Shown here: piece after piece, positions 8,450-46,021 of the stretch | How positions within the stretch are numbered: position 1 is the stretch's first letter | Layout: each line of letters starts with the position of its first letter | Virus record (IMG/VR): IMGVR_UViG_3300044712_002668 | Span: 1-64,000 of that record | Reading direction: 5' to 3' (one strand) | DNA length: 64,000 nucleotides | Notes under the pieces: generated by a model | What the model was told of the DNA's origin: nothing | The model's input: only the letters and a program-made list of their open reading frames with translations | Databases searched by the model: none | Translations under genes and position numbers: made by a program

Positions 8450-9976
8450 ATGAATATACAGAAATTATCTTCTCTTATACAAGGTACCGCTAAACAACTT
8501 CACAATAGCGAGAAATTACCTTTACCGCTTTTAGCAGTTAAAGCTCGTAAAGCTGCTGAAAGCCGTCCAATGGATATTCCAATTGTCAGTACCGCTCAGG
8601 TATTAACAAAAATGGCATCCAATCAAACGTTTATCAGTAGATCCGAGTTTGCTGAAGTTCTAAATAGCTTTAAAACACCAAGTTCAAAGTTGGCTGATGT
8701 ATTCGCTGAAGAACTAGGACAGAATGAACTTGATAAACCAAAGTTGTTTCAACGCGATTCAAATGAAGGTATGTCATTGGACCGTGATTATGATCGTTTG
8801 GCAGATCCTGTTTTAGCAAACGCTTTGAGCGGTGCTTTTTCAGAAACAAGAGAAGCTAAATTATATTCAAATGCAGAAGCTGAGAAGGCGCATAAATCCT
8901 GTTATGCACAGTTGCTAAGTGTTGGTTTGCCATCTCGTAGCATTACAACGTTTGCTGGTAGAAATGATATAATCATATGCCAAGCTTCCTATGAGAGTCC
9001 AAAGGGACAAGCTCATGTTTTGGTGCCAGTTGAAATCAAAGAAGGAAAAGCACTTCTACCATCAATGTTTTTGACAAGATTTGGATTCCGTGAGATCACC
9101 AAGGAAAATGTAGCGGCGCATGTTTTTGATGTTGCTGGAAAATCTTTCAAGGTAGATGGCGAGAATTTATTGAATGTTATAGCTGAGGCTAAACATGGAG
9201 TAAGAAAAGTTGCCAGCGATGTAGAGATGGCGGCAATCAAGCTGGCTTCTGAGAAGGGTAGAGCAGCTTTGGATCCAAGCCATGTTGTGTATGCAGAGCT
9301 TGATACTGATAAGCCTGCGGGCGTTCAGTTACCACAAATACCACTTACACAAGAAGAGGATACGTTTGCTAGTAAACTAAGTAATCCTGATGGTGTAGCA
9401 CGTTTTGTACATGGGGATAAGCTGGTTGAAGCTGCCAGACACATGCTGGTTTCTAAATTGGCAGGAATGTCATACAGGAACGTACAGGTAAAGGTAGCAG
9501 ATGTTGAGGATAAGAAGATATTCTTCAATGTGGCTATTGGCACTCATACTGGTTTGAAGGTACCTGTTGATATAAAGGGTGGAAACGCGATGCCACCAAA
9601 GGTAGTTATTGCTGATGGGCAGATTAAAGGGTTTTCTGCAACAGCAATCAATGATTTCGTTCAAAGCGGTCATGGTGGAGATAAGAGGGCTCTTGCAGCA
9701 GCATCTCCTACTTATGATATGAAACCAACAGAGCTTTTGGATGTTGTAAAACAATCAGTAGCCGAGGGTAATTATTTGAGAGCTGAGGAGGCTATAAATG
9801 TGCTTGGAGAGATTGATACTTCAGCCCAGCAGGTAGCATTGGCTCATTTTATGTCAAACATATACGAACCAGGAAAAGAACCTTCAAAACAAATCAAGGT
9901 TGCTGCATCAAAACCGGTGCAAGATCTTCCTGTTACATTTATGACTCACAAGATTTTCTTTCCTGAAGGAGAATAA
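8450..9976 (+). CDS. Putative virion (head) protein
   Basis: 508 aa; contains RKVA-S and IKVA-A motifs; no recognised family. Confidence 0.7.
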   Translation: MNIQKLSSLIQGTAKQLHNSEKLPLPLLAVKARKAAESRPMDIPIVSTAQVLTKMASNQTFISRSEFAEVLNSFKTPSSKLADVFAEELGQNELDKPKLFQRDSNEGMSLDRDYDRLADPVLANALSGAFSETREAKLYSNAEAEKAHKSCYAQLLSVGLPSRSITTFAGRNDIIICQASYESPKGQAHVLVPVEIKEGKALLPSMFLTRFGFREITKENVAAHVFDVAGKSFKVDGENLLNVIAEAKHGVRKVASDVEMAAIKLASEKGRAALDPSHVVYAELDTDKPAGVQLPQIPLTQEEDTFASKLSNPDGVARFVHGDKLVEAARHMLVSKLAGMSYRNVQVKVADVEDKKIFFNVAIGTHTGLKVPVDIKGGNAMPPKVVIADGQIKGFSATAINDFVQSGHGGDKRALAAASPTYDMKPTELLDVVKQSVAEGNYLRAEEAINVLGEIDTSAQQVALAHFMSNIYEPGKEPSKQIKVAASKPVQDLPVTFMTHKIFFPEGE

Positions 9977-10905
9977 TGGCTATTTCAATGGATTTAAGAG
10001 TTCTAGCTCGCAAGCTGGAGAAGAGCAGTGATGACTTATTGGTTAATGCGGCAGCAAAAGATCCTAATATTTTTGATAAAGTTGCCCAGGCTGTAGCCGC
10101 TGCTTCAACCTTACTTGAAGAAGTTGCAAATGATTTGGATGCCTCTCAATCTAATGAAATAAAACCAGAACAACTGGATGAAATAGCAGCATTAGCTTCT
10201 TCATTTTATGAGAGTGGAAATCCATTATTGAAAAAGCAGGCTTCTGTATTGGATGAGATATTGCTGTCTATTGCAGCTCCAAAAAACGCTATAGCTGAAT
10301 CTAAGAGAGTTAGTGAAGATGAGATTAATAAACTCAGAGCAAAGCGCAGGGGAGAGGCTGTTAAGGAGTTATATCAAGATCCAAAAGAAGCTCTTGATAA
10401 GATGAACCTTGTAAAAGAGCAAACTGATGCGGTCAAGAAGCAGGTAAAGCGTTATGCCCCATTGGAGGCTCCATTACAGACACGGTATGCACCTGATATG
10501 CCAGGTGTTATGATGACAAGAATTTCTGATCATATTTACCAAGATTTAGTTACTGGTAAGATTTATGACTTCAAGGCTGGATATACAACAGTTAAGGGAA
10601 ATAAAATTCCAGGTTCTTCTGTTGAAAATCAAACCGCTGCTCTGGGAGATCAGCGTCATGGCAATGCCATGTTTGAAACTCGTGAAAGTATTATGAATAG
10701 AATGGCTTCTGATGAAATTGACTTTATAAAACAGGCTGGTGATAAGATAAATATTGCCAAACAATTTTTGAAAGATGCCTCTGAGTTTTATCCTGAGAAG
10801 AAAGCGTTGGCAATCGAAGTGGTAGATAAATATCTATCAAATGATGATATGACACTTTCTTTGGACCTCTTGGATGGTCCAAAAAAAAAACTCATGAGGT
10901 GGTAG
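9976..10905 (+). CDS. Putative head protein/leader; 0-frame product ending just after an A10 slippery run
   Basis: 309 aa; KKQA-S, NRMA-S and IKQA-G motifs; ends ...GPKKKLMRW*. Confidence 0.75.
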   Translation: MAISMDLRVLARKLEKSSDDLLVNAAAKDPNIFDKVAQAVAAASTLLEEVANDLDASQSNEIKPEQLDEIAALASSFYESGNPLLKKQASVLDEILLSIAAPKNAIAESKRVSEDEINKLRAKRRGEAVKELYQDPKEALDKMNLVKEQTDAVKKQVKRYAPLEAPLQTRYAPDMPGVMMTRISDHIYQDLVTGKIYDFKAGYTTVKGNKIPGSSVENQTAALGDQRHGNAMFETRESIMNRMASDEIDFIKQAGDKINIAKQFLKDASEFYPEKKALAIEVVDKYLSNDDMTLSLDLLDGPKKKLMRW

Positions 10906-10951
10906 GTTTAAGCAGTTATGCTGCTTTCTTCCCTCCAACAGCACAACCTCA
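10879..10951 (+). other. Candidate -1 ribosomal frameshift / slippage site
   Basis: CCA AAA AAA AAA CTC (A10 at 10881-10890); -1 frame is open from the run into the 2096-aa ORF; downstream pairings AAGCAG/CTGCTT and TGAGGT/ACCTCA. Confidence 0.6.
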
Positions 10952-17954: not shown

Positions 17955-19924
17955 TAAACAATTTCTTTAAAAAGAAATTAGATAGCGATAGGTTTTTGCT
18001 TTTACCAGATGATGTGAAGGAAAAACTTATATCTGATTTTAATTTAATGTCTTCTTTGGGTATAGAGAATGAAGACGATCAAAGGAAGTTTTATTACATA
18101 TCATTACATACACCTAGAATAATCAAGGATTTATTTAAAAATCAAATTCCACATCATATGTATGGAAAAATTATTGAAGAGGTTTATAGTAACCGTGAAA
18201 ATAAGCCTGTTAATTCTTTATTGGCTTTAATGGAAGCTATTGATGGAGCCATAAAGAAAATGTTACCGGAACGTATGAAACTTGCTTATCCACAAGGGGA
18301 ACCAATTTTAAACCAAAGACCAACCTATAATCTTGAGAAATGGGTAGGGGCAACTAGAGATATTTACGCATTAATATCGAAGGGCAACAAAGAAAAGGAA
18401 GCCTTTGAAGAAGTAACCAAAAATTGGCAGGAAAGGGAAAAAATGAATTACGAAAAATGGTTGAATTTCTATAGAGAAAGGGTTCCAGAGAAATATACTA
18501 AGATGGCTAATTTATTTGTCACACCTAACGGTATATCTTTTGACGGTATTAATTATGATAGTTTGAAGTCAAAAATTCCAAATCCTATTTCTGTAACGAA
18601 TACTCCTGGTCATCCAAAAGACGTTCATGACACAGATGATAAATCTGATCAAAATGATGTAAGAGAACGTATTGATAGACAACGTACAAAGATTATTGGA
18701 CGTTTGCGCTCTGCTGAAAAATTGCTTGAAAGCAATGATGGTCAGTTATTTGCTGGTGACGATTTAGAGTTGATGTTGCGTTTACTACAAGATTTAAAAC
18801 GTAAAGTACAAACAGCTACTAAAAGGACAGTAAAATCATCATTATTTGACGATTATATAATTCGTACTGCGAATTATTTATCTTCTCTTGGTAAAGAACA
18901 AGCGGCTGACTTTTTTATAAAAGTAGCAGGCCCTCCAGGAATGCCTGAGATTCCTTCTCCATTAACTGGTCCATTGCCAGGTCCTAATGACCCTGTTGGC
19001 GGTAGTAGTGGAGGTGACGGAACAGGAGATAAGAATGATACTGAAGAGTTGTTAAAAGAGTTTTTTGACAATCTTTCCAGAGGTGTTCAGGACCCTGATA
19101 ATGAAGCCAGAGAGCGTAATCGTATTTTTGAAGACAAGAAACGTCCTCCTCATGGTCATGGCAGATATTCTGCTGGAAAACTTGATGTAAGGCCACCACA
19201 TGGTCAGGGTAGATATTCAAAAAAGAAAGCAGATGAAGAGTTTGAATTGGTTGTTGAAGCTCAAGAGGCTATACCAGCACAAGAGGTAGCGCCAGCTAAA
19301 GCACCTATTCCTGCCCCGGAAGCCATTCCAGAACCTGTTTCTGAGGCTCCTGCTGTGGAGGGTGCCATTGAGGATATAGAGCCCTCTGCGCCTAAGGTAG
19401 TAGAAGATAAAACCGATGACGTTATTGATGCTGCATTGAAAAATATCAGTATTGGAGATGTTGTAAAGCGTTTGGAGATGTTGGTTTCCATTTATAATCA
19501 ACGTGAGATTTCACGTCAATTATCAATTCTTGATATTATGATGGATAGGGTTGGTTTAGCATCATTTTTCCCAAGTCTTGGAGAGGCAATGGCTAAGGCA
19601 TTGGAGGCCAATCAATACATCGGTAGTCGTTTGGAAGATGTGTTGACAAAAGTAAAGGGTTCAATGCAAATACCTGGAGCTGATCAATGGACAGAGATTA
19701 AGCAAGATACAGCACCGGAAACAATGGCTATCAGACAAAATCTTGAAAACCAAGAGGCTGAGGAACAAAAGAGAAAAGACCTAAGAAAACAAAAGGAGCT
19801 TAGCAGGCTTGAAGGAAAGGAACCGGCAGCAGCACCTGCTGCACCCCCACCACCATCTATCGAACCACAAGAGTTGGAAAGACCAGCACGCGTTGAAACC
19901 ACACCACCAATTCAAACTAGATAA
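17951..19924 (+). CDS. Putative multi-segment head protein
   Basis: 657 aa; MKLA-Y, TKMA-N, IKVA-G and KKA-D motifs, Pro-rich linkers, RPPHG(H/Q)GRYS duplicate. Confidence 0.75.
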   Translation: MINNFFKKKLDSDRFLLLPDDVKEKLISDFNLMSSLGIENEDDQRKFYYISLHTPRIIKDLFKNQIPHHMYGKIIEEVYSNRENKPVNSLLALMEAIDGAIKKMLPERMKLAYPQGEPILNQRPTYNLEKWVGATRDIYALISKGNKEKEAFEEVTKNWQEREKMNYEKWLNFYRERVPEKYTKMANLFVTPNGISFDGINYDSLKSKIPNPISVTNTPGHPKDVHDTDDKSDQNDVRERIDRQRTKIIGRLRSAEKLLESNDGQLFAGDDLELMLRLLQDLKRKVQTATKRTVKSSLFDDYIIRTANYLSSLGKEQAADFFIKVAGPPGMPEIPSPLTGPLPGPNDPVGGSSGGDGTGDKNDTEELLKEFFDNLSRGVQDPDNEARERNRIFEDKKRPPHGHGRYSAGKLDVRPPHGQGRYSKKKADEEFELVVEAQEAIPAQEVAPAKAPIPAPEAIPEPVSEAPAVEGAIEDIEPSAPKVVEDKTDDVIDAALKNISIGDVVKRLEMLVSIYNQREISRQLSILDIMMDRVGLASFFPSLGEAMAKALEANQYIGSRLEDVLTKVKGSMQIPGADQWTEIKQDTAPETMAIRQNLENQEAEEQKRKDLRKQKELSRLEGKEPAAAPAAPPPPSIEPQELERPARVETTPPIQTR

Positions 19925-20921: not shown

Positions 20922-21424
20922 TGACAAAAAGACACTTGAAATTGGCAGCAATAAGAAAAAATGATGATAATCCATGTCCGTATGGATTACCAATTCCATT
21001 TGGCTGTCAATATTCTGGTGGTGTAATTGATCGTATGGCTACTTTTGATATGATGGGCAAAGAAGTCACAGATGAGGAAAAACAAGAAATTGCAGATGCA
21101 AACGTAAAACTACTTGCGTGGAGTATTACAAACGAAGAGCATGAAATAAAAAAATGCCCTTATGCAGCTAAGATTTTTGAAGAGAAGAATTCATCAGAGT
21201 GTAATTATGATGATACAGCTCCTGGTGAGGGTCAGAAATCAACTTTGATGGCTGCTCCCTTTTATTCTCAGATTTTCAGTGGTATTGCATTGAATGGTTT
21301 ATATTCTTATCCCATTGGATATTATGCAGATTATAATATAAGTAGAAACTTGTTTTACGGTATTTTCTCATTACAAGGTGGAATAGTCTTACACGATACA
21401 GTTATTAAGGTTGGTAGAAAGTAA
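20921..21424 (+). CDS. Hypothetical Cys-containing protein
   Basis: CPYGLPIPFGC, KCPYA, ECNY; TAATG-coupled. Confidence 0.7.
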   Translation: MTKRHLKLAAIRKNDDNPCPYGLPIPFGCQYSGGVIDRMATFDMMGKEVTDEEKQEIADANVKLLAWSITNEEHEIKKCPYAAKIFEEKNSSECNYDDTAPGEGQKSTLMAAPFYSQIFSGIALNGLYSYPIGYYADYNISRNLFYGIFSLQGGIVLHDTVIKVGRK

Positions 21425-32264: not shown

Positions 32265-32423
32265 ATGTTAATAAAAACAGGTGATGCACAGATAATTGGT
32301 GTTGTGAAAGAAGCCAATAATGATGCGTTGGAAGACAAAGAAAGGGAAAAGATTTTAAAGCAAGCCCTGGAACAGGCTAAAAATTCACCAAGACCAATTA
32401 AAAAAACGAGTTCGGAGATCTAA
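32265..32423 (+). CDS. 52-aa ORF missed by the ORF track; N-terminus duplicates that of the protease gene
   Basis: GGAG RBS; MLIKTGDAQII...; TAATG-coupled to 32423. Confidence 0.65.
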   Translation: MLIKTGDAQIIGVVKEANNDALEDKEREKILKQALEQAKNSPRPIKKTSSEI

Positions 32424-35400: not shown

Positions 35401-35938
35401 TCCTCCAAAGGTTCGCAAGCAGGCTGAAGAGATTCACAATCTTGTAACCGCAGGACAGCTCGATCCAACAGACGTTGATGGATTGGTTGCTCATGGGGTA
35501 GATCCAGCGGCTGTAAAGTACTGGAAGGAAATGTGGGGTGCTGCTGGAGACTCTGAGTCAAAGGAATTTGCTACCAAGATGGTTGCAGAGCATCAGGCAT
35601 TCAAGGCAGCCGAGGACATGACATCTCATAAGGCTCGTATCAAGCAGGCTTATGAGTTAGCTTATGACATGGAAAGAAAGGGTATGATTGATCATGGACA
35701 GATTGATGATCAGGTCAATGAGATCATGAACTGGAATGAGGCTGGTTTCAACAGCGTCAAGAACATGATTGGACGTAAGCCTGTCGTAAAGCAAGCTTCT
35801 ATTCCAAATGTTGGCTTGTTACACTCCGGAGATGTAATACTTCCATCTGCACAGTTTGCAGGTGTTGAGTCCGTATCTTCTAATGGATCCGAAATCAAGA
35901 ACTACTTCGAGAGTTATTTTGCAAACAAGAGACTGTAA
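32423..35938 (+). CDS. Prohead (maturation) protease fused to scaffold-like region
   Basis: N-terminal domain with LCLDH, NVSMG and IELSLVVSGADPKA typical of phage prohead serine proteases; then coiled-coil, repeat, Pro-rich and acidic segments; lies between portal and capsid genes. Confidence 0.75.
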   Translation: MLIKLGESQIRSGDIQSIEKISNDIDLDIENRMTKFAKQLKVIAPQAKDFLYFTCVMMHAAEASLLNDDGSLKKHADGSPVRAQWEKVGDHGIKWICSDRNVKPYKNNNNDIFPEKELKVAYKKWVGRPLCLDHQSQSVDKIRGVIVDTVWDEKRKRVIALCALDKKNYPDLAHKVASGVATNVSMGTAVGRAVCTEDGCHRVAKTERDFCQHMRNKSCYGEINLDLSPIELSLVVSGADPKAKVKHIIAKDLGKAAETLTDYLGMKEGDGDITKDDLKEVQKDLEQLTKKISKLTGELDEITEETDIHDASAYPATRSTYEVSDVETSGVNLRAPEQIPLYASDLQKAIMGAQEKIAQLQENYNRLSSLLKSEESMTRKNAYFQGTVEPKPGETMYTPDPLADKARLMDKHLHGPGDFPDVGNVEGMYPGITQDDEELKKKLQRLAEEEERALFREAALKKAKENLLKRQAELKSEAYWQGTTEPKPGQTTYKPDPLNNEAREDDKHLQGQKPFPDVGNVDGLYGDDMKTKEKLSRASLNAKFRKAAGSDGRLDKAASRWEVYANDTLILTASVDQITKGNADVLFESVATKRFGKSLLDRIQSEGFEATRAALLKTAGAPPAPPAMPEMPPAAPPAGAPPAPPVGAEEPPQAPEKGGDRVKEIINDLRDLLDEIDNKISDLEEHCLGPVEEDATHVENVEPAPEHDFAGEAPKTASQLQRMRKTVNGMLRDGIHEMMSDLSAHAKEIKTASELYKRSYDTMTPEQRKYLNALAADAVTDAKSALRESVRLMGAVVKYAHGTAELEKRAMKSEKEEEDCNAAEDPMGDPMGELTELTPETLGEIGGEEEIPGPEETEEAGVPTDVTESIEQALEEEAGDLPEEEEEELEEEDVGNAPGDIVNQNGKTTVELNPQNMKFPGPVQASLNTKESRAQARMKLAEKAVELGFNDLSGKAHPKGSVDAPNVETKPSVDAKFHVPQDLKSLMLDLANLPPKVRKQAEEIHNLVTAGQLDPTDVDGLVAHGVDPAAVKYWKEMWGAAGDSESKEFATKMVAEHQAFKAAEDMTSHKARIKQAYELAYDMERKGMIDHGQIDDQVNEIMNWNEAGFNSVKNMIGRKPVVKQASIPNVGLLHSGDVILPSAQFAGVESVSSNGSEIKNYFESYFANKRL
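33557..34003 (+). repeat. Two copies of a ~53-aa unit in the scaffold region
   Basis: RKNAYFQGTVEPKPGETMYTPDPL...DKHLHG..FPDVGNVEGMY vs KSEAYWQGTTEPKPGQTTYKPDPL...DKHLQG..FPDVGNVDGLY. Confidence 0.9.
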
Positions 35939-36685: not shown

Positions 36686-36686
36686 T

Positions 36687-36872
36687 ATGGAAAAAATCGC
36701 GCTTGATGTATTAATGAATTCATATTTGAATGGAAAGATAGAAAAGGTTGCTCATGAAAAAACAGCAATTGATTCTTTAGCCAAAGCTCAAAGTCTATTG
36801 GTGAAAGCCAATGATGACGAGCATGCGGATATGATAAGTGAAATATTGAATAGTTATGCTGAGGATATATGA
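36687..36872 (+). CDS. Small putative head protein
   Basis: Starts MEKIA-L; AGGA RBS. Confidence 0.65.
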   Translation: MEKIALDVLMNSYLNGKIEKVAHEKTAIDSLAKAQSLLVKANDDEHADMISEILNSYAEDI

Positions 36873-37174
36873 CATTATTTAAACAGGCATCTACTGAAAA
36901 AGAGTTATATGATGGTATGAGTGAAAATATTGATCATGTATATGATAGTATACCAAATCAAAATGTTGATTTAGTGGATCAAGCGATTACTGAACTGGAA
37001 ATTGCGGCGAAAGCATTTCAAACTTCTGGTTTGATTGTTCAAGCCGCAAAGACAGAAAAAGTAGTAAAATCTTTAAAAAAGAAAAAGAATAAAAAACCAA
37101 CTAAAGAAGAGGTCAAAGGATTCAAACCATTTGGCTTCAAGAAAAAAGATTTAGTGAAGGGAGATGATAAATGA
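36869..37174 (+). CDS. Small putative head protein
   Basis: Starts MTLFKQA-S; Lys-rich tail. Confidence 0.65.
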   Translation: MTLFKQASTEKELYDGMSENIDHVYDSIPNQNVDLVDQAITELEIAAKAFQTSGLIVQAAKTEKVVKSLKKKKNKKPTKEEVKGFKPFGFKKKDLVKGDDK

Positions 37175-37449
37175 AAAATATAAAAAAGATTGCTATGCAG
37201 GCGGCAAAAGCTGCAGCAATTAATACTTATAAAAGTATTATGAAAGCAGCTGATTTAACAAATAAATTTACACCACAACAAATTGATGCGTTTCCATTTA
37301 TTTTGGCTAATACAGCTACACAATTAGGTTGGAAAAAGATAGGGCAAGGATCTGGAACTGATAAGAAAACATATGATATTTATGAAAACAACAAGTCAGA
37401 TCAAAGATATCAAGAGCCTTTCTATAAAGCAATACCAAACGCTCTATAA
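37171..37449 (+). CDS. Small putative head protein
   Basis: Starts MKNIKKIA-M. Confidence 0.6.
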   Translation: MKNIKKIAMQAAKAAAINTYKSIMKAADLTNKFTPQQIDAFPFILANTATQLGWKKIGQGSGTDKKTYDIYENNKSDQRYQEPFYKAIPNAL

Positions 37450-37512: not shown

Positions 37513-37520
37513 GTTATATA
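37512..37520 (+). promoter_or_regulatory. TG(A/T)TATAT(A/G) candidate phage promoter motif
   Basis: TGTTATATA; related copies at 4541, 23044, 24955, 46042, 50890 and 53922, all upstream of gene starts. Confidence 0.5.
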
Positions 37521-37540
37521 TGTATAGTAAAGGAGAATGA

Positions 37541-38230: not shown

Positions 38231-38239
38231 GAGATATAA

Positions 38240-38644: not shown

Positions 38645-38706
38645 AATACAATGCATAACCAGATATTCTTATAGCTTTAGTGAAAGCTATGGGCAAAAGG
38701 TGAATA

Positions 38707-39054: not shown

Positions 39055-40794
39055 ATGAAAATAGCTAAGCAATCATTTAGTAATCTGTATACTTCTGAGG
39101 TGTATCGTGAGCTTGAGCGTAAAGCTGTCAAGAAGGGTTTTTTCGAACCTACAGCCAAGCAGGTAGTGGAGCATGCCATTCAGAAGAAAGCCTCTCCTAA
39201 AGAGGATTTAGAGGCTACAGGGGATGTTACTCAGGACATTGGCAAGTTGGTTGAAGCCTGTCGTAGGAAGGGTTATATAAAATTTGCTGATGATATTGAG
39301 AGCAAATTTGTTTTATATAAGCAGGCTGAATCTCAACTATACAATCTGAATGTGGACAAGATCAAGGACATTGAGGATTTTGCACATAAGGATGGAGATG
39401 TTGATATTGTAGATGCTGGTGACTTGGGAATGGTAGAAACCATTGAGAGTGCTGCACAGAAGATCTTGAGTGTAGTAAAGACTGAGCCAACTGGAAAGTT
39501 GGCGGCTTTTTCTGCGCATATTTTGAAGACTGCAGAACAACCAGCTATAACTATAAAACCTCCAGAGGGGCTTACAAATATATTGGCAAATGTTGGAAAC
39601 AAAACTGCAGATAGTATCTGGGTTGAAACAAAGAATAACATTGCAAAATATAAAAACTCTTTACAACCTATAAATATTACGTTTCCAGACTTTAAACTTT
39701 GGAATAATGATATTATAAAAATGTATAGTAAATATTCTAATATAAAAACAGAACGTATAATAATGTTTTTATCGTTATATACATCTTTGGGGGCTCAATT
39801 AAATGATATAAAGCCAATTGTTGCTGCCATATATAACAACCCAGAAAATATTAGAGGTATTTGTAAGCAATTAAGTATGACAGATTCTGATAATTATTTT
39901 ACAGGGGTTTCTAGAATAGAACTTCCAACTGATACAGGGGAACGTGAAGATCGTGGAAACACCAGTGTAGATAGACCAAACACTTACCTTGGTTGGTGGG
40001 CAAACAGAATAAAAGGTAATGTAGGAGAATTTTTTGCAGGCTCTCCAACAACAAAAGGTCAGGAAAATCCAAAATCAATTTATACAAAAGGATTAGATCA
40101 GCAAATAAGAGTTGGAGCTGTTGAAAACATTCAAGAATTGGCTGGTAAGATATTAATAGAGTGGAAAAAATTATATGATGATGTTGTAGGGCCAAATCAA
40201 TCTAAAATATCAGAAGCAAATACTGCGGTTTCAAACAAAATAAATGAGTTTACTGGACAAATAAAAACACTTAATTTGAGTGAAGATATAAAAAATGCAA
40301 ATGGATCAATTAATCCAAAACTTTGCTATGATTCTTTGAAGTCTTTTTCAGATAAATTAAACGGCATTATAAAAACAGCTGTAGAATTACAAAATGAGCT
40401 TAAAACATTATCTTCAGAAAATTATAAAGGACTTTCTGATACTGTTAATGGACTAACAGGAGAATTAAAATCAGATAAAATTGCCGTTCTTATGCAGGAT
40501 CCTAATGGTAAGAAAAATGTAGAAGAGAAAATATATGTTGCTCCCATGATGGTTAAACTTGGTAAAGTAAAAGTTTATCTTGAATCAATGGTAGATAATG
40601 CTTCCGATGAAATTAAACCAAAAATAAAAGAAAACATAGAAAAAGTAGACATTTTAATAGATTTGATTAATCAAGCAAAAGGTAAACCATTTGCAGAGTT
40701 GAAGGTAAATTTAGCCCAATATGATGTTGATTTTAATTCAATAGATCAGTTGTTAGGATGGGTAAACGCTACAGCGTCTAAAATGGGCTTATAA
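39055..40794 (+). CDS. Putative internal/ejection protein (conserved leader plus AT-rich cargo)
   Basis: 579 aa; TSEVYRELER, helical module, LKTA-E, then composition shift. Confidence 0.7.
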   Translation: MKIAKQSFSNLYTSEVYRELERKAVKKGFFEPTAKQVVEHAIQKKASPKEDLEATGDVTQDIGKLVEACRRKGYIKFADDIESKFVLYKQAESQLYNLNVDKIKDIEDFAHKDGDVDIVDAGDLGMVETIESAAQKILSVVKTEPTGKLAAFSAHILKTAEQPAITIKPPEGLTNILANVGNKTADSIWVETKNNIAKYKNSLQPINITFPDFKLWNNDIIKMYSKYSNIKTERIIMFLSLYTSLGAQLNDIKPIVAAIYNNPENIRGICKQLSMTDSDNYFTGVSRIELPTDTGEREDRGNTSVDRPNTYLGWWANRIKGNVGEFFAGSPTTKGQENPKSIYTKGLDQQIRVGAVENIQELAGKILIEWKKLYDDVVGPNQSKISEANTAVSNKINEFTGQIKTLNLSEDIKNANGSINPKLCYDSLKSFSDKLNGIIKTAVELQNELKTLSSENYKGLSDTVNGLTGELKSDKIAVLMQDPNGKKNVEEKIYVAPMMVKLGKVKVYLESMVDNASDEIKPKIKENIEKVDILIDLINQAKGKPFAELKVNLAQYDVDFNSIDQLLGWVNATASKMGL

Positions 40795-40807: not shown

Positions 40808-42793
40808 ATGCTTTCTAAATTTGCAAAAATGATAATAAACAAAACAGGTGGTTTAGATTTTTCTGAAGGTGTTGGAAAACAAAATCCATCTCAAAAAACA
40901 CCAGCGGTTGTTCCTTCTGCGCCAGGAGCTGTATCACCACCAGCTTCTGGAACTGTATCACCAACTTCAACATCACAACAAACAACTGGTGATGTAAAAC
41001 AACGCGAAAATATAATCCGTGGTATGCAGTTTGCTATGTCAAAACTTCAAGATGAGGTTTATGCTAAAGAAGACGTCGCAAAAACCATAATGGGACTTAG
41101 AAAGCAATCCGGTGATACCATTGAATCTGTTCAAAAGAAAATAAATGAATTGTCTGCTCAGTTTGGCAGAACTGCTAAACAAAAACAATATACAGCCGCA
41201 AACCTCGATGGAGTTTGGGGTTCTGCTACAGAAACAGCCTTGAAGAAAATTCAGGAGTTTATGGTGTATGCAAACATAACAGGCATACCAGCCATATCTC
41301 CTGATAGAGTCAAATCAAACGATGCAAATTCTATTTCAAAAGACATTGAAAGGGCTGAAAATAATACCAGAACCCTGGAATTGTTATTTCAACAATTGGG
41401 AATTAAATTCCAGTCTGGACTGGGTGGTTCTAGTCAAATTTTTGATCAAATTAAACAAGATCTCCTTGAGGAAGATACAAGAAATCCATTACAAGCACAG
41501 GCTCGTGGTAATGTTGCTGTTACAGCAGATAACTTAAAAGATATATATTCTTTTATATATTTTGCTGTTAGTGCTGAGTTGAAGATTAATGGTATTGTAC
41601 CAAATCCAGAAGAAAAAAATGGTAAAATTGGTAGCAGCATACAAAGTAAAGGAACACCACCAACGGCAAGAGTAGGAAACCAAGAAGTTGTAGATCCTTG
41701 GACTCATCCTTCTTATCGCAAAGCTCAAAAAGAAGAAGTTTTAAAATCATTGGCTGAATTGATTAAATCTTCCACAATTGTACGTTTATCTGAGAATAAA
41801 CCAGGTTGGGGAGTACGTTTTCCAGATGTACCAGAGGGTACAAATACTACGAAAGTTGAAGAAACTGATGCTGACGAAGAGGCTGGAGTTTTAGCTGATG
41901 ATCCTTATTCTGGAGCTGATATTCCTGATGATGAGTATCAGGTTGCACCACCAACTGGTATGAGTGGTGGTGTGATTTGTATTGCTCAGATTGATGCTAT
42001 GTTGACATGGTTTCAAAAAAGATCTTTCTTTGTTGAAAGTTATTTTGGTATTGGTTTAAATAAAAGAGATAAACACCCAATAGAAACAAACCGTTTTATA
42101 ACAAATGCTGATGTTCAACTAGCAAGAACTTATAGACAAATGGTTGAGAATCTTATTAGAATGTGGGGTGTGGTAAAGAAGGCATTGATGGATGATGGAT
42201 TTACCCCATATCAACCATTTAGTTTGAGTGATTTAGCAGATTTATATAGATTACACGGCTGGTCCACATATGGCTCTGGTGGAGGAATAATACCCGGACG
42301 TGGTGGCCCTGGATATGGACAATCCGGACGATATGGAAGAGGTCGTAGGGGGCCTGGTGGGCAGATTATTGAAGGATTACCAGAAACAACATCAGACCCT
42401 CCTTTTGGAGGAAAATATCTTGATATGAATCGTTTGATTAGTGTTTTCGGACCATCTGTTTCACGAGTAAAACCTGATCTTGTAAATGGTATTAAAGAGT
42501 ATTTTATTCAAGGAAGCATACCTTATAATGCGTTTACAAATATGGAAGTAAATACTTTTAGACGTGCCTTTACTTATTGTAAAGATGATAATGATTTAGC
42601 TTTGGCTATGCAAGATTTAAGTGCTTTCTTGCAAGGTGTATATGCTACCTGGGCAAAACGCAATCAACCACAGGCTTTGATACAAAGACAATCTGATTTT
42701 CATAGTTTATGGCAACAACAAATATGGTCTTTGCAACAGGGTGCAGAGTGGAAGCCAGTATATGAAAGGGCATTACCACACCTAAGACACTAA
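40808..42793 (+). CDS. Putative ejection protein with peptidoglycan-binding-like motif
   Basis: 661 aa; LDGVWGSATETALKKIQEF (41204-41260) resembles PG_binding_1. Confidence 0.6.
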   Translation: MLSKFAKMIINKTGGLDFSEGVGKQNPSQKTPAVVPSAPGAVSPPASGTVSPTSTSQQTTGDVKQRENIIRGMQFAMSKLQDEVYAKEDVAKTIMGLRKQSGDTIESVQKKINELSAQFGRTAKQKQYTAANLDGVWGSATETALKKIQEFMVYANITGIPAISPDRVKSNDANSISKDIERAENNTRTLELLFQQLGIKFQSGLGGSSQIFDQIKQDLLEEDTRNPLQAQARGNVAVTADNLKDIYSFIYFAVSAELKINGIVPNPEEKNGKIGSSIQSKGTPPTARVGNQEVVDPWTHPSYRKAQKEEVLKSLAELIKSSTIVRLSENKPGWGVRFPDVPEGTNTTKVEETDADEEAGVLADDPYSGADIPDDEYQVAPPTGMSGGVICIAQIDAMLTWFQKRSFFVESYFGIGLNKRDKHPIETNRFITNADVQLARTYRQMVENLIRMWGVVKKALMDDGFTPYQPFSLSDLADLYRLHGWSTYGSGGGIIPGRGGPGYGQSGRYGRGRRGPGGQIIEGLPETTSDPPFGGKYLDMNRLISVFGPSVSRVKPDLVNGIKEYFIQGSIPYNAFTNMEVNTFRRAFTYCKDDNDLALAMQDLSAFLQGVYATWAKRNQPQALIQRQSDFHSLWQQQIWSLQQGAEWKPVYERALPHLRH

Positions 42794-42804: not shown

Positions 42805-44091
42805 ATGAACGGAGATATTCAATACATATCAGATACACTGCTTCTGGAGAAGACATTTAAAATACTGTCTTCTCTGGAAGCTGATCCGTTTAATAAAAAA
42901 GCCGGTATTATAGATAATTTAAAATCCTCAATTGGTTCTGGTATTGATGAAGCTATCAAACAACATGTTAGTTTTGATTCGCCAGAATCTACCATTCATA
43001 CTGTGATTGGCATTCTTCAAGGACCAGTTTTATGGGCAATTGGTGGTTGGCAGATTTCTTTATTGGCCACTGCCGCTCAAGTTCTTTGGGGTATTGATAT
43101 TTATACCATTATCAAGAAGCTTGTCCAAATAATATCAGGCATGTTGCAGGTAAAGAAACAATTGTCATTTGATGATGTTACAAACGCAATTAGAAGTGTA
43201 ATGCCAGCTGGATTGATGGAAGAAAAAAAGACAGCCGGTGATTTTTTGTTTGGTTTGAGAGAACTTGAAGAACAAGGTAAAATCTTAAAAGCTGCTTCTT
43301 ATAAAATACCAAAAGAGCAAGATAGATTGATTGTTCTAGCTGCTGGAGCCTCTACTCAACCAGCCGCTGGAAATATAAAAAACCTATTATCATTCATGGG
43401 AAAGGCCAGAGGCATGTTCCTGATTATGGGTATTTTCAGATGGATAATTGTAACACTATTAATGGGAACTGGCTTATTGGCCGGTGGTCATATTTTGAAG
43501 AAGTTTGTTGGTAAAGAACTGGCTGAAACTGGAATTCAAGATAAATGGAATAAGCTTATTCAAGGAGATGTCAGTGGGCTTTGGGGAGCAAAACCAGAGG
43601 CCAAGCCTGATGCAAAGCCAGAAACCAAAACTGATACTAAAGCTGCTCCATCTATTTGGTCAAAAATATTCGGGGATGGAACTTCTACGGTTCCATCTGC
43701 ACCTGATATAAAAACAAAACAACCATCTTTATTATCAAGGCTGTATTCTAATATCGTAGGAAAGCCAGAAAAAAGTTCAGACATGGTATATGAACCATTG
43801 AGAGATAATTATGGTAAATTAAGAACTATTGCTGAGTTGATTTGGGATTGGATTATGGATGAGTTTGAGGATCAATATCCAAAGCTTGAATCTTTCAAAG
43901 AAAAAATAACAAGCTCACAATATTTTAAGAAAGTAGAGCTTACGCTTAAAGCAGCATACAATAAGGGAAAATCTGATAATAGAAGTCCTGAAGGACTTAT
44001 TATGCCAGATGAATTACCAAATCGTGAAGCGGTTTTTAACTATATGAAGCCAATATTGGATCCAATATTCGCACAGGCAAAAAGAGGTTGA
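42805..44091 (+). CDS. Putative membrane-active ejection protein
   Basis: 428 aa; long hydrophobic segments (VIGILQGPVLWAIGGWQISLLATAAQVLWG; GMFLIMGIFRWIIVTLLMGTGLLAGG). Confidence 0.55.
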   Translation: MNGDIQYISDTLLLEKTFKILSSLEADPFNKKAGIIDNLKSSIGSGIDEAIKQHVSFDSPESTIHTVIGILQGPVLWAIGGWQISLLATAAQVLWGIDIYTIIKKLVQIISGMLQVKKQLSFDDVTNAIRSVMPAGLMEEKKTAGDFLFGLRELEEQGKILKAASYKIPKEQDRLIVLAAGASTQPAAGNIKNLLSFMGKARGMFLIMGIFRWIIVTLLMGTGLLAGGHILKKFVGKELAETGIQDKWNKLIQGDVSGLWGAKPEAKPDAKPETKTDTKAAPSIWSKIFGDGTSTVPSAPDIKTKQPSLLSRLYSNIVGKPEKSSDMVYEPLRDNYGKLRTIAELIWDWIMDEFEDQYPKLESFKEKITSSQYFKKVELTLKAAYNKGKSDNRSPEGLIMPDELPNREAVFNYMKPILDPIFAQAKRG

Positions 44092-44094
44092 AAA

Positions 44095-45345
44095 ATGTTT
44101 GAGGATAGTGAAATTTTTGACGAATATGCAAAAATAGCATTCGCACAGGGCCTGGTTGCCGAAGCGGAAGAGGATAAAGAGGCACCAAAACCAAAAACGC
44201 GCAACAAAGATACTGATGAATCAATTCAGTTGCTGTATGGAATCAATCCAGAGAGTATTTTTAAAGAGGATTGTATTTTGGATGCAGCTCATCCTGAATC
44301 AAAATCAGTTGGCAGATCTTATGATGCCATGAACTCAATTGTTGAGAATCTTCATGAAAGACAAGATATTATGGCTTATATAGCTCAGAAAGTACCGAGA
44401 GGTGTGCTGACTATGGAGCGTTATGTCAAGGCCAAGGAAGAACTTGTCAATTCTATCATCAGAGCAGCGTTTCTATTTGATAATAGAAATGAAACAGCGT
44501 TGATGTCATTGGCTGATAAGTGTGCTGAACAAGTAGCATCTCAAAGAGTAAAGAACGCTGCTGCTGGTATTCTGCCTGCATTGGTTCCCGCTGCAGGTAC
44601 TGCACTGGTTGGAACCGGAGTTGCTGCAGGAGCAGTGCTTGCTGGCTATTTGGCATGGGGGCCAACTTTAGCTGTGGGCGTTAAAAACAACGGACAGCAA
44701 GTGATTGATGCTTTGATCAATTTGCAGGGAGAAGAATATTTCTCCACTTTATTACAATCTGTTTACGATACAGTTTTGGATTTGATGGAAATAACTGGTA
44801 AAGTATCAGCTTATAAAATCAAAATCGATCAAGATCAGATGACAAATCCTGATAATACACAATTGAGTCCTAGTTTTTTTGCGGAGGCAAATAATGCCCT
44901 TACCATATATACAAGGGCATTAGGAATTGTAAAAGAAAATATTCCAAAGTGGGTATCAACTTTACAAAGAGCACATACAACAGCAAAAATGCTTGAATCT
45001 CAAGATAACACTGATATTTCAAATAAATTCTATTATGTTCTTGGAATGGTAAAATGGGATCAAGTTGATATAGTGATAGATAAACTTACAGGGCGCAAGA
45101 TATTCAGTGGTTTATCAGAATCATTCATGAAGAAAAGAGAACCAACTATCGGTGGTTTATATGGAGCTATAAAGCTTGAAGAGGAGTCCGCAAAGAAATA
45201 TATTGAGGTTACCTCTCAAATATCAAGGCAAGCACCAATAACACCTGGAATTTCACAACCAATAACACCTGGAATTTCCCAAAAACCTGAAGCTGGAAAA
45301 TCAACTCCTAAATCTGGAATCAAGAAACCAGAATTTTATTTCTAA
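44095..45345 (+). CDS. Putative membrane-active ejection protein
   Basis: 416 aa; EDSEIFDEYAK leader, VKNA-A followed by a ~40-aa Gly/Ala hydrophobic stretch. Confidence 0.55.
   Translation: MFEDSEIFDEYAKIAFAQGLVAEAEEDKEAPKPKTRNKDTDESIQLLYGINPESIFKEDCILDAAHPESKSVGRSYDAMNSIVENLHERQDIMAYIAQKVPRGVLTMERYVKAKEELVNSIIRAAFLFDNRNETALMSLADKCAEQVASQRVKNAAAGILPALVPAAGTALVGTGVAAGAVLAGYLAWGPTLAVGVKNNGQQVIDALINLQGEEYFSTLLQSVYDTVLDLMEITGKVSAYKIKIDQDQMTNPDNTQLSPSFFAEANNALTIYTRALGIVKENIPKWVSTLQRAHTTAKMLESQDNTDISNKFYYVLGMVKWDQVDIVIDKLTGRKIFSGLSESFMKKREPTIGGLYGAIKLEEESAKKYIEVTSQISRQAPITPGISQPITPGISQKPEAGKSTPKSGIKKPEFYF
45234..45278 (+). repeat. 21-bp direct repeat with 24-bp period (PITPGISQ x2)
   Basis: ACCAATAACACCTGGAATTTC at 45234 and 45258. 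Confidence 0.9.
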
Positions 45346-45346
45346 T

Positions 45347-46021
45347 ATGAAACAAAATCAAGTAAAACTTTCTTCTATAAAGGATTTGCTAATAACAAAT
45401 CCTTTGCTTGATTTAAAAAAATCACAAGAGAAGATAAAAGCTAATGAGGCTAAACCTGCCAATCCAACTATAAAACAATGGAAAGAGTATTTAAAATCAG
45501 ATGGAAAATATACTGGTGATGTAAATTCTCCCGATATTGATAATGACTTTAAAACAGCAATGATAAATGCAGAAAGTGCATTATCAAATGATGTCCCTTC
45601 AATAAAGGGATTGATTTGGACAGGAAATAGTATCAATCCTGCAATTTCTATTACAGATTATCAACAGGCATTAAAGCTTTTAATCGAGAAAAAGAAGCCG
45701 AATTCTGAAAAAGAAAGTACATCTCAAAAAACTTCAAGCAGAATTGAAATTCTTAAAAAAATGGCCCATGCAACAATGGATGCAATTGGCCCGATTACCG
45801 AGGCAATGCAAGATGCTCCTAATGCTACAAAGATGCAAAAAGATCCGGGAGCTGCCGCTGCAGAAACGGGAAATCCAGAAACTTCTCCAATTCAAAACGT
45901 AATGATAAATAAACTGCCTCAAAAAAAGCAAAAACAAGAAGATAAGCTGCTTCAAAATAAGCCTAATATTGACGACAGAATGCTTCAACTTGTAGATTTA
46001 ATAGAAAAAACACAACATTGA
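45347..46021 (+). CDS. Hypothetical virion protein, possible degenerate PG-binding motif
   Basis: IKQWKEYLKSDGKYTGDVNSPDIDNDFKTAM; KKMA-H. Confidence 0.6.
   Translation: MKQNQVKLSSIKDLLITNPLLDLKKSQEKIKANEAKPANPTIKQWKEYLKSDGKYTGDVNSPDIDNDFKTAMINAESALSNDVPSIKGLIWTGNSINPAISITDYQQALKLLIEKKKPNSEKESTSQKTSSRIEILKKMAHATMDAIGPITEAMQDAPNATKMQKDPGAAAAETGNPETSPIQNVMINKLPQKKQKQEDKLLQNKPNIDDRMLQLVDLIEKTQH

What the first reader, a model, noticed from the sequence alone, without database searches (positions are those of the whole stretch)
8450..46021. K-x-A motif marks nearly all head-module proteins: a candidate new prohead-protease specificity and polyprotein maturation system
Seen: at least 10 head-module ORFs have K-x-A in their first 10 residues: MTKRHLKLA (20921), MTKTA (21470), MSIEKEA (26962), MIDEGFLKTA (28647), MHKRA (31623), MEKIA (36687), MTLFKQA (36869), MKNIKKIA (37171), MKIA (39055), MLSKFA (40808). 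It also falls at domain boundaries: RKVA-S 9206, IKVA-G 18920, portal YKQA-D, scaffold LKTA-G/PKTA-S/VKQA-S, LKTA-E 39526, VKNA-A 44551. None of the 12 replication ORFs with visible starts, and none of the ORFs from 48787 to 62506, begin this way. Established: T4 gp21 and phiKZ gp175 cleave many head proteins at short Glu-ending motifs. Inference: the protease at 32423 cuts after K-x-A, removing leaders and releasing domains inside the head. That would be an Ala-P1/Lys-P3 specificity, unlike those examples.
Basis: partly seen in the sequence, partly recalled or inferred. Interest (0 to 1): 0.85.

Follow-up and report, generated by a model that had tools for sequence, protein, structure and literature searches.

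The report
Conserved K-x-A tag on phage head proteins
Many head-assembly proteins of this uncultivated 336-kb jumbo phage and its relatives carry a conserved Lys-x-Ala motif at or near their start, most likely the cutting site of the phage's own head-maturation protease, but no cleavage has been shown.

Summary
Ten of 31 ORFs in 8450-46021 have K-x-A in their first 10 residues, against 0 of 29 elsewhere in the window. Only about 0.1% of shuffles reach 10 for any of 1,200 pair motifs. The motif holds at the amino-acid level, since codons vary, and it is conserved in relatives. In 23 related contigs, 53% of genes upstream of the capsid gene have K-x-A in the first 35 residues, against 7% downstream. 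Three more distant contigs were read with database gene calls; two of them again show starts such as MKKKA, MIIKEA and MNKTA.

ORF 32423-35938 is a T4 gp21/herpes-assemblin-fold protease fused to a scaffold, not a capsid protein. The true capsid gene is 46878-47888, outside the stated range. Conserved K-x-A sites lie before the protease core, before a Pro/Ala linker, and about 45 residues from the C-terminus.

The best reading is that K-x-A is a P3-x-P1 site for the prohead protease. It would trim short leaders and cut the scaffold and portal, as in T4/phiKZ and herpes UL26, where Ala also sits at P1. Cleavage is inferred only.

The "polyprotein" and "domain boundary" claims lack statistical support. 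This is a new variant of a known kind, of moderate interest.

The parts
32423..35938 (+). 1171-aa protease-scaffold fusion. The protease core is about aa 50-250 (nt 32570-33172). The rest is coiled-coil scaffold with Pro/Ala- and acid-rich linkers.
   Evidence: phrog_18299 'head maturation protease' at aa 113-217, E 5e-16. tblastn finds phage G gp19 and annotated capsid maturation proteases. AF2 pLDDT 87.3. Foldseek top hits are 5JBL (T4 gp21), EBV, VZV, PRV, HSV-1 and HCMV proteases. The alignment shows the scaffold-like remainder.
32822..32824 (+). His134, candidate catalytic His
   Evidence: Invariant in 60 diverse homologues. Assignment to the catalytic position is an inference.
32975..32977 (+). 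Ser185, candidate catalytic Ser (V-S-M-G)
   Evidence: Invariant in 60 diverse homologues. Assignment is an inference.
32525..32533 (+). K35-F-A37, a site just before the protease core
   Evidence: [KR] and A are jointly kept in 85% of 132 diverse fusions, with a variable middle residue. It aligns with K-T-A of phage G gp19.
33185..33193 (+). K255-A-A257, a candidate release site just after the protease core
   Evidence: Kept in 9/10 close relatives but in only 8% of the wide family at that column. 59/101 have some K-x-A within 45 aa after the core.
34271..34279 (+). K617-T-A619, immediately before the Pro/Ala-rich linker
   Evidence: Jointly kept in 77% of 132 fusions, with P2 variable and P1' Gln in 103/132.
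34565..34573 (+). K715-T-A717|S, immediately after the variable linker
   Evidence: Kept in close relatives. Among the 23 of 133 fusions in which the downstream LQ-x-MRK anchor could be found, many read x-T-A|S-L-Q with Ala-Ser kept and P3 variable.
35789..35797 (+). K1123-Q-A1125|S, 46 aa from the C-terminus (analogue of the herpes M-site)
   Evidence: [KR]-x-A-[SAG] occurs in the last 80 aa of 112/133 diverse fusions, mostly 39-48 aa from the end. Joint conservation at the column is 67%.
20939..20947 (+). N-terminal K7-L-A9 of ORF 20921-21424
   Evidence: The orthologue in L103 lacks it.
21476..21484 (+). N-terminal K3-T-A5 of ORF 21470-22339
   Evidence: The gene at the matching position in L103 starts MRRNA; orthology is judged by position only.
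26974..26982 (+). N-terminal K5-E-A7|Q of ORF 26962-28647
   Evidence: E-K-E-A-Q is kept in 10/11 orthologues that are only 23-29% identical overall.
28668..28676 (+). N-terminal K8-T-A10|S of ORF 28647-30203
   Evidence: Orthologues have L-R-x-A-A at the same place.
31629..31637 (+). N-terminal K3-R-A5|Y of ORF 31623-32252
   Evidence: Orthologues read [KR]-[KR]-A-Y-S.
36693..36701 (+). N-terminal K3-I-A5 of ORF 36687-36872
   Evidence: Only one orthologue was found.
36881..36889 (+). N-terminal K5-Q-A7|S of ORF 36869-37174
   Evidence: Orthologues read F-K-x-[AG]-S.
37186..37194 (+). N-terminal K6-I-A8 of ORF 37171-37449
   Evidence: No orthologue was retrieved.
39058..39066 (+). N-terminal K2-I-A4 of ORF 39055-40794. 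Further sites are K44-K-A46|S (39184-39192) and K158-T-A160 (39526-39534).
   Evidence: The Lys of the N-terminal site is not conserved. K-x-A-[AS] at about aa 45-50 and K-x-A-[QE] at about aa 158 are kept in most orthologues.
40817..40825 (+). N-terminal K4-F-A6 of ORF 40808-42793
   Evidence: Partly kept in orthologues.
42895..42903 (+). K31-K-A33 of ORF 42805-44091
   Evidence: [KR]-x-A is kept in all 17 distinct orthologues within a variable context.
44131..44139 (+). K13-I-A15 of ORF 44095-45345, and K153-N-A155 (44551-44559)
   Evidence: K-I-A is kept in 96% but lies inside a conserved helix-like segment. K-[EN]-A at about aa 153 is kept after a gap of variable length.
25287..25295 (+). 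Portal K112-Q-A114 (numbered from 24954), before a Gly/Ser-rich linker and the start of the portal-family match
   Evidence: Y-K-x-[AG]-[STD] is kept in orthologues. The PHROG portal match begins at aa 110.
46947..46955 (+). K24-Y-A26 in the N-terminal extension of the major capsid protein (46878-47888)
   Evidence: phrog_2522 at 8.5e-78. [KR]-[YFL]-A-[AS] is kept across the clade. Phage G's capsid protein lacks the first ~45 residues.
7952..10905 (+). Three ORFs (7952, 8450, 9976) unusually rich in K-[VILQ]-A-[SGDA]
   Evidence: Observed 6, 10 and 7 K-x-A against 1.4, 4.9 and 3.7 expected. The sequences are shown. Their function is unknown.
18920..18928 (+). K324-V-A326|G of ORF 17951-19924, before a Pro/Gly-rich linker
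   Evidence: No orthologues were retrieved.

Best explanation
K-x-A, more exactly [hydrophobic]-(x)-[K>R]-x-A followed often by S, A, Q or G, is the P3-x-P1 recognition site of the phage's own prohead serine protease, the N-terminal domain of ORF 32423.

Proposed mechanism:
- The protease is made as a protease-scaffold fusion and is built into the procapsid.
- After shell assembly it cuts itself and the scaffold: before the protease core, near the Pro/Ala linker, and about 45 residues from the C-terminus. The last cut would free the scaffold from the shell.
- It trims short 4-37-residue leaders from roughly 10-15 proteins encoded between the portal and capsid genes. These are presumed internal or ejection proteins and include a dual-specificity phosphatase.
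- It probably also removes about 114 residues from the portal and about 26 from the capsid protein.

Shown here: the motif, its enrichment, its conservation and the protease fold. Inferred: that cutting occurs, where it occurs, and by which enzyme.
For: (1) N-terminal enrichment survives look-elsewhere and lysine-matched controls.

(2) The constraint is on amino acids. The Lys and Ala codons vary synonymously.

(3) Lys and Ala are kept while the middle residue and the surroundings vary, in orthologues only 23-30% identical (ORFs 26962, 28647, 42805).

(4) The pattern holds across the clade. In 23 relatives, 113/212 genes in the 10 kb upstream of the capsid gene have K-x-A in the first 35 aa, against 17/232 downstream. 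Lys is followed by Ala at +2 in 20.3% against 3.6% of cases.

(5) Two of three distant contigs read with database gene calls show it again: 6/21 genes in L103 and 4/22 in L105 start with M-x(1-6)-K-x-A. L104, which covers only the region upstream of the protease, shows one such start.

(6) The protease-scaffold protein has twice the expected K-x-A (21 against 10.4, z=3.7). Its sites at aa 35, 617 and 1123 are kept in 67-85% of 132 representatives clustered at 50% identity. A [KR]-x-A-[SAG] lies 39-48 aa from the C-terminus in most of the 112/133 that carry one in their last 80 aa.

(7) The enzyme has the T4 gp21/assemblin fold. Every known specificity in that clan has the same i/i+2 format, as expected for a substrate bound as an extended strand: T4 I/L-x-E (PMC12991175); phiKZ S/A/G-x-E and herpes (V/L/I)-x-A|S (own knowledge; Ala as the in vivo C-terminal residue of PrV assemblin is in PMC4498786).

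(8) Short N-terminal leaders that end in the protease motif are established for T4 internal proteins (capsid targeting sequence; PMC9024508 citing Mullaney and Black 1996).
Against: - There is no proteomic or biochemical evidence of cleavage for this phage or any relative. No paper reporting a K-x-A site was found.
- Leaders of only 4-5 residues (MKIA, MHKRA) are shorter than any documented prohead-protease propeptide that I know of.
- Some motif copies sit in well-conserved, probably helical segments, for example K13-I-A15 of ORF 44095 and several in the scaffold. These could be structural.
- An unbiased search for conserved 'islands' in variable regions recovered K-x-A only weakly (3 pairs).
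- Sites are not enriched next to flexible linkers overall.
- In phage G, the closest cultured relative, K-x-A at N-termini is not significantly enriched (7/57 against 3/50).
- Orthologue counts are not phylogenetically independent.
- Only 64 kb of the 336-kb genome was examined.
Confidence: 0.55

Rival explanations
1. K-x-A is part of a short N-terminal docking or capsid-targeting peptide that binds the scaffold, protease or shell interior to load cargo proteins, and it is not cleaved. This would resemble encapsulin cargo-loading peptides or the P1 DarB N-terminal signal.
For: The motif is strongly position-biased to the N-terminus, at 4.2% per position in residues 1-10 against 1-2% later. Several tagged proteins share longer N-terminal helical segments of the type S-E-V-x-R-E-x-x-[KR]-x-A (ORFs 38707, 39055, 44095). 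N-terminal targeting signals without a known consensus exist in P1 (PMC9024508).
Against: It does not explain conserved internal copies in the scaffold, at the portal linker, or near the scaffold C-terminus. An i/i+2 pattern with a free middle residue fits strand-like protease binding better than a helix face. In T4 the targeting peptide and the cleavage site coincide, so the two readings are not exclusive.
Confidence: 0.2
2. The sites are cut, but by another enzyme: a host protease (as Prp trims phage 80alpha capsid and scaffold leaders in Staphylococcus) or a second phage protease encoded elsewhere in the 336-kb genome.
For: Very short leaders resemble host-processed N-termini (own knowledge of 80alpha/Prp). 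Phage G also encodes ClpP/ClpX, both detected in virions (PMC12484599). 272 kb of this genome was not seen.
Against: The protease-scaffold protein itself carries the best-conserved sites, including one before its own core and one near its C-terminus. This is the hallmark of autoprocessing assemblin-type enzymes (PMC4498786). The motif is confined to the head module.
Confidence: 0.07
3. There is no function. The pattern would be a by-product of Lys-rich, Ala-rich N-termini of highly expressed late genes or of helical heptad composition, picked out after the fact.
For: Head-module N-termini are Lys-rich (12.5% against 5.7%). K-x-F is conserved about as well as K-x-A across the orthologue alignments. 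The scaffold is K/A/E-rich. The motif was chosen post hoc.
Against: The family-wise shuffle probability is about 0.001 and the lysine-matched p is 8e-5. Tail genes, which are also late, have none. The pattern recurs in distant genomes with independent gene calls. Spacing 2 is more conserved than spacings 1 and 3-6: 30.6% of K..A pairs at spacing 2 are kept in at least 80% of orthologues, against 17-23% at other spacings.
Confidence: 0.05

Closest known systems
T4 gp21 / phiKZ gp175 / SPN3US gp245 prohead proteases with motif-directed processing of many head proteins
   Same: The protease fold is the same (Foldseek top hit 5JBL). Both use a three-residue P3-x-P1 motif shared by scaffold, portal-region and internal head proteins. 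Both have short N-terminal leaders that end in the motif, as in the T4 capsid targeting sequence. In the jumbo-phage cases there are many head-internal proteins.
   Different: P1 would be Ala rather than Glu, and P3 Lys rather than Leu/Ile or Ser/Ala/Gly. Leaders are as short as 4-8 residues. The protease is fused to the scaffold. Nothing has been verified by mass spectrometry.
Herpesvirus UL26 assemblin-scaffold precursor (R-site and M-site, cut after Ala)
   Same: An N-terminal assemblin-fold protease is fused to a C-terminal scaffold in one ORF. A conserved x-x-A|S site lies a few tens of residues from the scaffold C-terminus. There is a candidate release site after the protease core. Ala is at P1 and often Ser at P1' (PMC4498786).
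   Different: P3 is Lys rather than Val/Leu/Ile. Many additional substrates carry N-terminal tags. The third catalytic residue was not examined, and sequence identity is about 10%. A nested scaffold gene like UL26.5 is only hinted at: an in-frame ATG at aa 377 preceded by GAGGA.
Bacillus (Lysinibacillus) phage G head module
   Same: It is the closest cultured relative: protease gp19 32% identical, portal 33%, capsid protein 54%. The gene order is the same: portal, then protease, then decoration protein, then capsid protein. K-T-A in gp19 aligns with K35-F-A37. K-V-A-S and K-I-A-S follow its protease core.
   Different: Protease and scaffold are separate genes. Phage G leaders look like M-K-R-L-I-K-K-[AS], and K-x-A alone is not significantly enriched there. 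Its capsid protein lacks the ~45-residue N-terminal extension.
Phage protease-scaffold fusions or nested genes (P2 gpO, lambda C/Nu3, Mu I/Z)
   Same: Protease and scaffold functions lie on one polypeptide and undergo autoprocessing (own knowledge).
   Different: Those phages are small and have few substrates. No shared multi-protein N-terminal motif is known for them.

Membership tests
Assemblin / T4 gp21-type prohead serine protease (clan SH) | Characteristic protease fold | tested here: met
   The AF2 model built from 60 sequences has pLDDT 87.3. Foldseek against the PDB gives, at ranks 1-5, T4 gp21 (5JBL; prob 1.00, TM 0.50 on the target), EBV protease and VZV protease. PRV, HSV-1 and HCMV proteases follow. 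E-values are modest (1.5e-3) and TM-scores are 0.3-0.5.
Assemblin / T4 gp21-type prohead serine protease (clan SH) | Sequence-profile match to annotated head maturation proteases | tested here: met
   phrog_18299 at 5e-16. tblastn finds phage G gp19 (3e-24) and RefSeq 'head/capsid maturation protease' genes. There was no Pfam hit and no PDB sequence hit.
Assemblin / T4 gp21-type prohead serine protease (clan SH) | Invariant catalytic His and Ser | tested here: inconclusive
   H134 and S185 are invariant in 60 diverse homologues. They were not mapped onto catalytic positions by superposition, and the third triad residue was not identified.
Assemblin / T4 gp21-type prohead serine protease (clan SH) | Gene located between the portal and major capsid genes, next to or fused with the scaffold | tested here: met
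   Portal is at 24954, protease-scaffold at 32423 and MCP at 46878.
Assemblin / T4 gp21-type prohead serine protease (clan SH) | Proteolytic activity on head proteins | not testable with these tools
   This needs biochemistry or virion proteomics.
Motif-directed multi-substrate head maturation (T4 / phiKZ type) | A short P3-x-P1 motif shared by many head proteins and enriched relative to non-head proteins | tested here: met
Motif-directed multi-substrate head maturation (T4 / phiKZ type) | Glu at P1 | tested here: not met
   The conserved residue is Ala.
Motif-directed multi-substrate head maturation (T4 / phiKZ type) | Mature virion N-termini begin immediately after the motif | not testable with these tools
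   No proteome exists for this clade. The phage G capsid paper (PMC7316594) is not held.
Herpesvirus UL26-type protease-scaffold precursor | Protease and scaffold in one ORF | tested here: met
   132 of the 150 listed representatives are 1,000-1,700 aa.
Herpesvirus UL26-type protease-scaffold precursor | Maturation site with Ala-Ser near the scaffold C-terminus | tested here: met
   K1123-Q-A|S is the window's copy. [KR]-x-A-[SAG] occurs in the last 80 aa of 112/133 fusions. This is a sequence-level result only.
Herpesvirus UL26-type protease-scaffold precursor | Release site directly after the protease domain | tested here: inconclusive
   K255-A-A is kept only in close relatives. 59/101 have some K-x-A within 45 aa of the core, where roughly 32% would be expected by chance (my own rough estimate).
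Herpesvirus UL26-type protease-scaffold precursor | Hydrophobic P3 (Val/Leu/Ile) | tested here: not met
   P3 is Lys or Arg at most conserved sites.
T4-type capsid targeting sequence | N-terminal leader of about 20 residues or fewer that ends in the protease motif | tested here: met
   Ten leaders of 4-10 residues in the window and similar ones in relatives.
T4-type capsid targeting sequence | The leader is sufficient to direct a foreign protein into the capsid | not testable with these tools
   This needs a cultured host-phage pair.

The most novel reading that the evidence does not exclude
A minimal 4-10-residue N-terminal M-x(n)-K-x-A tag serves as both the cargo-loading signal and the cleavage site for about 15 or more head-internal proteins, enzymes included. 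It would operate across a very large clade of uncultivated jumbo phages (over 2,000 protease clusters at 50% identity). The protease-scaffold fusion with Ala|Ser cutting would then be a phage-side counterpart of the herpesvirus UL26 system, pointing to an ancestral Ala-P1 specificity in the assemblin clan.
Probability: 0.2. Interest if true: 0.75.

Novelty: new variant of a known kind. Interest (0 to 1): 0.55.

Why it matters
If confirmed, the motif would give a sequence rule for predicting which proteins are packaged and processed in the heads of a large, uncultivated jumbo-phage clade related to phage G. Nearly all proteins in these head modules currently have no annotation.

It would add a third specificity class, Lys-x-Ala, to phage prohead proteases alongside the Glu-P1 enzymes. 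It would also tie phage enzymes more closely to herpesvirus assemblins, through the shared fold, the shared protease-scaffold fusion and Ala at P1.

A 4-10-residue loading and cleavage tag would also be of practical use for packaging foreign proteins into capsids.

Tried and rejected
- Megablast of 32423-40794 against cultured phages found no match.
- Pfam found nothing for the protease-scaffold protein or for 18 other module proteins, apart from a phosphatase.
- Sequence and profile searches of the PDB gave nothing useful.
- The first AF2 run with 11 close sequences was too poor to use (pLDDT 45). It was repeated with 60 diverse sequences.
- Scans for relatives with ORF 17951 and with the terminase returned only the window's own contig, so ORFs 8450-22400 have no orthologue test.
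- A search for conserved islands in variable regions gave only a weak signal. The top pairs were L-xx-A (5), L-K (3) and K-x-A (3).
- The test for association of K-x-A with downstream P/G/S-rich linkers was negative.
- N-terminal K-x-A in phage G was not significant.
- A nucleotide-level explanation was rejected because the codons vary.
- The idea that ORF 32423 contains the capsid protein was rejected.
- Literature searches for a described K-x-A prohead-protease site found none. The key phage G capsid and proteome paper is not in the library.

Full report
**Context.** The window is the first 64 kb of IMG/VR contig IMGVR_UViG_3300044712_002668, which is 335,988 bp long. All genes are on the + strand and GC is about 37%. 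No cultured phage matches at the DNA level. Profile searches identify:
- the large terminase at 23077-24957;
- the portal at 24954/24972-26903;
- a head-maturation protease domain at aa 113-217 of the 1171-aa ORF 32423-35938;
- a tRNA nucleotidyltransferase at 19927;
- a dual-specificity phosphatase at 30482;
- a decoration-like protein at 46117;
- the major capsid protein at 46848/46878-47888 (phrog_2522, 8.5e-78).

The ORFs at 8450-23018 have no recognisable function.

**Check of the observation.** All ten quoted N-termini are present. Each follows an ATG with a Shine-Dalgarno-like motif.
- K-x-A occurs in the first 10 residues of 10/31 ORFs in 8450-46021 and of 0/29 ORFs elsewhere (Fisher p=8.5e-4).
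- Because the motif was chosen after looking, I counted all 1,200 residue pairs at gaps 0-2. K-x-A is the most frequent that does not involve Met1.
- Shuffling residues 2-10 gives a mean of 2.0 K-x-A. Any motif reached 10 in only about 0.1% of 5,000 shuffles.
Of 32 Lys at positions 2-8 in the head set, 10 have Ala at +2, where 7.5% is expected (p=8e-5).
- The Lys and Ala codons vary synonymously, so the constraint is on the protein.
- Across whole proteins, the portal-to-45347 set has 74 K-x-A against 49.3 expected (z=3.85). The excess comes mainly from ORFs 32423, 39055 and 28647.
- ORFs 7952, 8450 and 9976 are also enriched. The 2,096-aa ORF is depleted.

**Conservation.** Fourteen related contigs were fetched with the protease protein, which is 52-64% identical in all but one (33%). 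Eighty more were fetched with the capsid protein, which is about 80-91% identical.

*N-terminal sites.* Lys and Ala are kept while the middle residue and the surroundings vary:
- ORF 26962: E-K-E-A-Q in 10/11 orthologues that are only 23-29% identical overall;
- ORF 28647: L-[KR]-x-A-[AS];
- ORF 31623: [KR]-[KR]-A-Y-S;
- ORF 36869: F-K-x-[AG]-S;
- ORF 42805: [KR]-x-A at about aa 31 in all 17 distinct orthologues;
- ORF 39055: K-x-A-[AS] at about aa 45-50 and K-x-A-[QE] at about aa 158;
- ORF 44095: K-[EN]-A after a gap of variable length;
- portal: Y-K-x-[AG]-[STD] at aa 112, just before a Gly/Ser linker and the start of the portal-family match;
- capsid protein: [KR]-[YFL]-A-[AS] at about aa 25, within an N-terminal extension that phage G's capsid protein lacks.

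*Spacing control.* Pairs of Lys and Ala at spacing 2 are jointly conserved more often than at spacings 1 or 3-6 (30.6% against 17-23%).

*Clade-wide counts.* In 23 relatives, 53% of genes in the 10 kb upstream of the capsid gene have K-x-A in their first 35 residues, against 7% downstream. Lys is followed by Ala at +2 in 20.3% against 3.6% of cases.

*Distant contigs.* Three contigs were reached through representatives of the protease family and read with the database's own gene calls. L103 has starts MSSKKKVA, MLKKKA, MIIKEA, MKKKA, MLLKKA and MRKKA. L105 has MNKTA, MLGRFIKTA and MAFLKTA. L104 covers only the region up to the protease and has just one such start, MNKEA.

These counts are not phylogenetically independent. 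They do show that the feature belongs to the lineage and is not an accident of one genome.

**What ORF 32423 is.** The alignment shows a conserved N-terminal domain followed by coiled-coil segments and Pro/Ala- and acid-rich linkers of variable length. It is a scaffold, not a capsid protein.
- A profile search of 1.84 billion representative proteins finds 2,154 clusters. The best 150 are nearly all fusions of 1,100-1,600 aa.
- A 60-sequence alignment has invariant H134 and S185. It gives an AF2 model with pLDDT 87.3.
- The model's best PDB matches are T4 gp21, then EBV and VZV proteases. PRV, HSV-1 and HCMV proteases come lower in the list, interspersed with weak MCE-domain hits. TM-scores are modest (0.3-0.5).
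- In 132 diverse fusions, [KR]-x-A is kept at aa 35-37 (85%), 617-619 (77%, directly before the Pro/Ala linker), 939-941 (87%) and 1123-1125 (67%).
- A [KR]-x-A-[SAG] occurs in the last 80 residues of 112/133, mostly 39-48 residues from the end.
- The site after the linker (P-K-T-A|S-Q-L-Q) is kept in close relatives. The downstream anchor could be located in only 23 of 133 fusions. Many of those read x-T-A|S-L-Q, with Ala-Ser kept and P3 variable.

**Mechanism proposed.** The layout is an assemblin-fold protease fused to a scaffold, with a conserved Ala|Ser site a few tens of residues from the C-terminus and candidate sites flanking the protease core. This is the layout of herpesvirus UL26, where the R-site releases the protease and the M-site frees the scaffold from the shell. 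The in vivo C-terminal residue of PrV assemblin is Ala (PMC4498786).

The multi-substrate aspect, and the short N-terminal leaders ending in the protease motif, match T4 internal proteins and the phiKZ/SPN3US systems (PMC12991175 for I/L-x-E; PMC10052503; PMC9024508 for the capsid targeting sequence). All known specificities in this clan have the P3-x-P1 form. That is what one expects for a substrate bound as an extended strand, with alternate side chains facing the enzyme. K-x-A has the same form.

I therefore rate the protease-site reading as the best explanation, at about 0.55. The main rival is a docking peptide that is never cut, and the two are not exclusive. Others are cleavage by a different protease and a compositional artefact.

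**What is not supported.** The general statement that K-x-A marks domain boundaries fails a simple test: 5% of sites are followed by P/G/S-rich sequence, against a 5.8% background. The individual examples are real, at 18920, at portal aa 112 and at scaffold aa 617.
- There is no sign that the 2,096-aa ORF is a polyprotein.
- An unbiased search for conserved islands recovered the motif only weakly.
- Phage G is the closest cultured relative, with protease 32%, portal 33% and capsid protein 54% identical. It does not show significant K-x-A enrichment at N-termini.
- Phage G does have a related basic leader, R-[LI]-x-K-[KTA], in 6/57 head-region genes against 0/50 replication genes.
- No paper describing a K-x-A prohead-protease site was found, and the phage G capsid and proteome paper is not in the library.

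**Verdict.** The motif is real, conserved and specific to the head module. Its likely role as a prohead-protease site is a well-founded inference. It would be a new specificity within a known kind of system, with Ala at P1 already known from herpesvirus assemblins. Interest is moderate (0.55). It is testable by re-searching phage G virion mass spectra and by expressing the protease domain.

Noticed in passing
L010:9589-14046 and L012:10001-14458 (relatives); absent from window 32423-35938: An intein of about 370 aa with a LAGLIDADG homing endonuclease interrupts the protease domain at about aa 108 (Pfam Intein_splicing 6.6e-13, LAGLIDADG_3 8e-14). About 20 of the 150 representative homologues show the same split match.
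   Followed up: partly
L016 (Bacillus phage G, bases 1-50000): Several head-region proteins start with a basic leader such as MKRLIKKAS, MKRLISKTAA or LKRLIKKSN. R-[LI]-x-K-[KTA] occurs in the first 14 aa of 6/57 genes there, against 0/50 in a replication region (L106).
   Followed up: partly
window 33005-33061 (aa 195-213 of ORF 32423): C195, C200 and C211 are invariant, with H213 nearby, in an insert of the protease domain. This may be a zinc-binding site, which to my knowledge has not been described for T4 gp21.
   Followed up: no
window 33551-33553 (aa 377 of ORF 32423): An in-frame ATG is preceded by GAGGA 8 nt upstream. It could start a nested scaffold-only product, like herpes UL26.5 or lambda Nu3.
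   Followed up: no
window 46878-47012: The capsid protein has a highly conserved N-terminal extension of about 45 residues that is absent from the phage G capsid protein, which is otherwise 54% identical. It may be a small removable propeptide.
   Followed up: partly
window 30482-31591: A dual-specificity/tyrosine phosphatase-like gene sits inside the head module, and its orthologues begin M-P-x-[RK]-F-[AS]. Distant relatives carry DUF192, NIF phosphatase and ferritin domains at similar positions (L104, L105). These are candidate packaged enzymes.
   Followed up: no
window 38707-39054, 39055-40794, 44095-45345: Three head-module proteins share an N-terminal segment of the type S-E-[VI]-[FYW]-x-E-[YLF]-x-[KRQ]-x-A. 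This suggests a common N-terminal module, possibly a scaffold- or shell-binding helix.
   Followed up: no
window 37541-38230 and 38240-38644: These are two paralogous small proteins (MLKLVQVGNALPVSYPV... and MFKIVESINKAPIRFPI...). The first is 74-83% identical across relatives, making it one of the most conserved in the module after the capsid protein. Neither has any K-x-A, and their function is unknown.
   Followed up: no
window 10899-17189: A 2,096-aa ORF has no Pfam or PHROG match and starts with GTG after an A-rich run. It has fewer K-x-A than expected.
   Followed up: no
L103:3527-5449 (distant relative): The large terminase of this relative also begins with a K-x-A leader (MSSKKKVA), although terminases are not expected inside proheads. 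It may be chance or a caveat for the protease reading.
   Followed up: no
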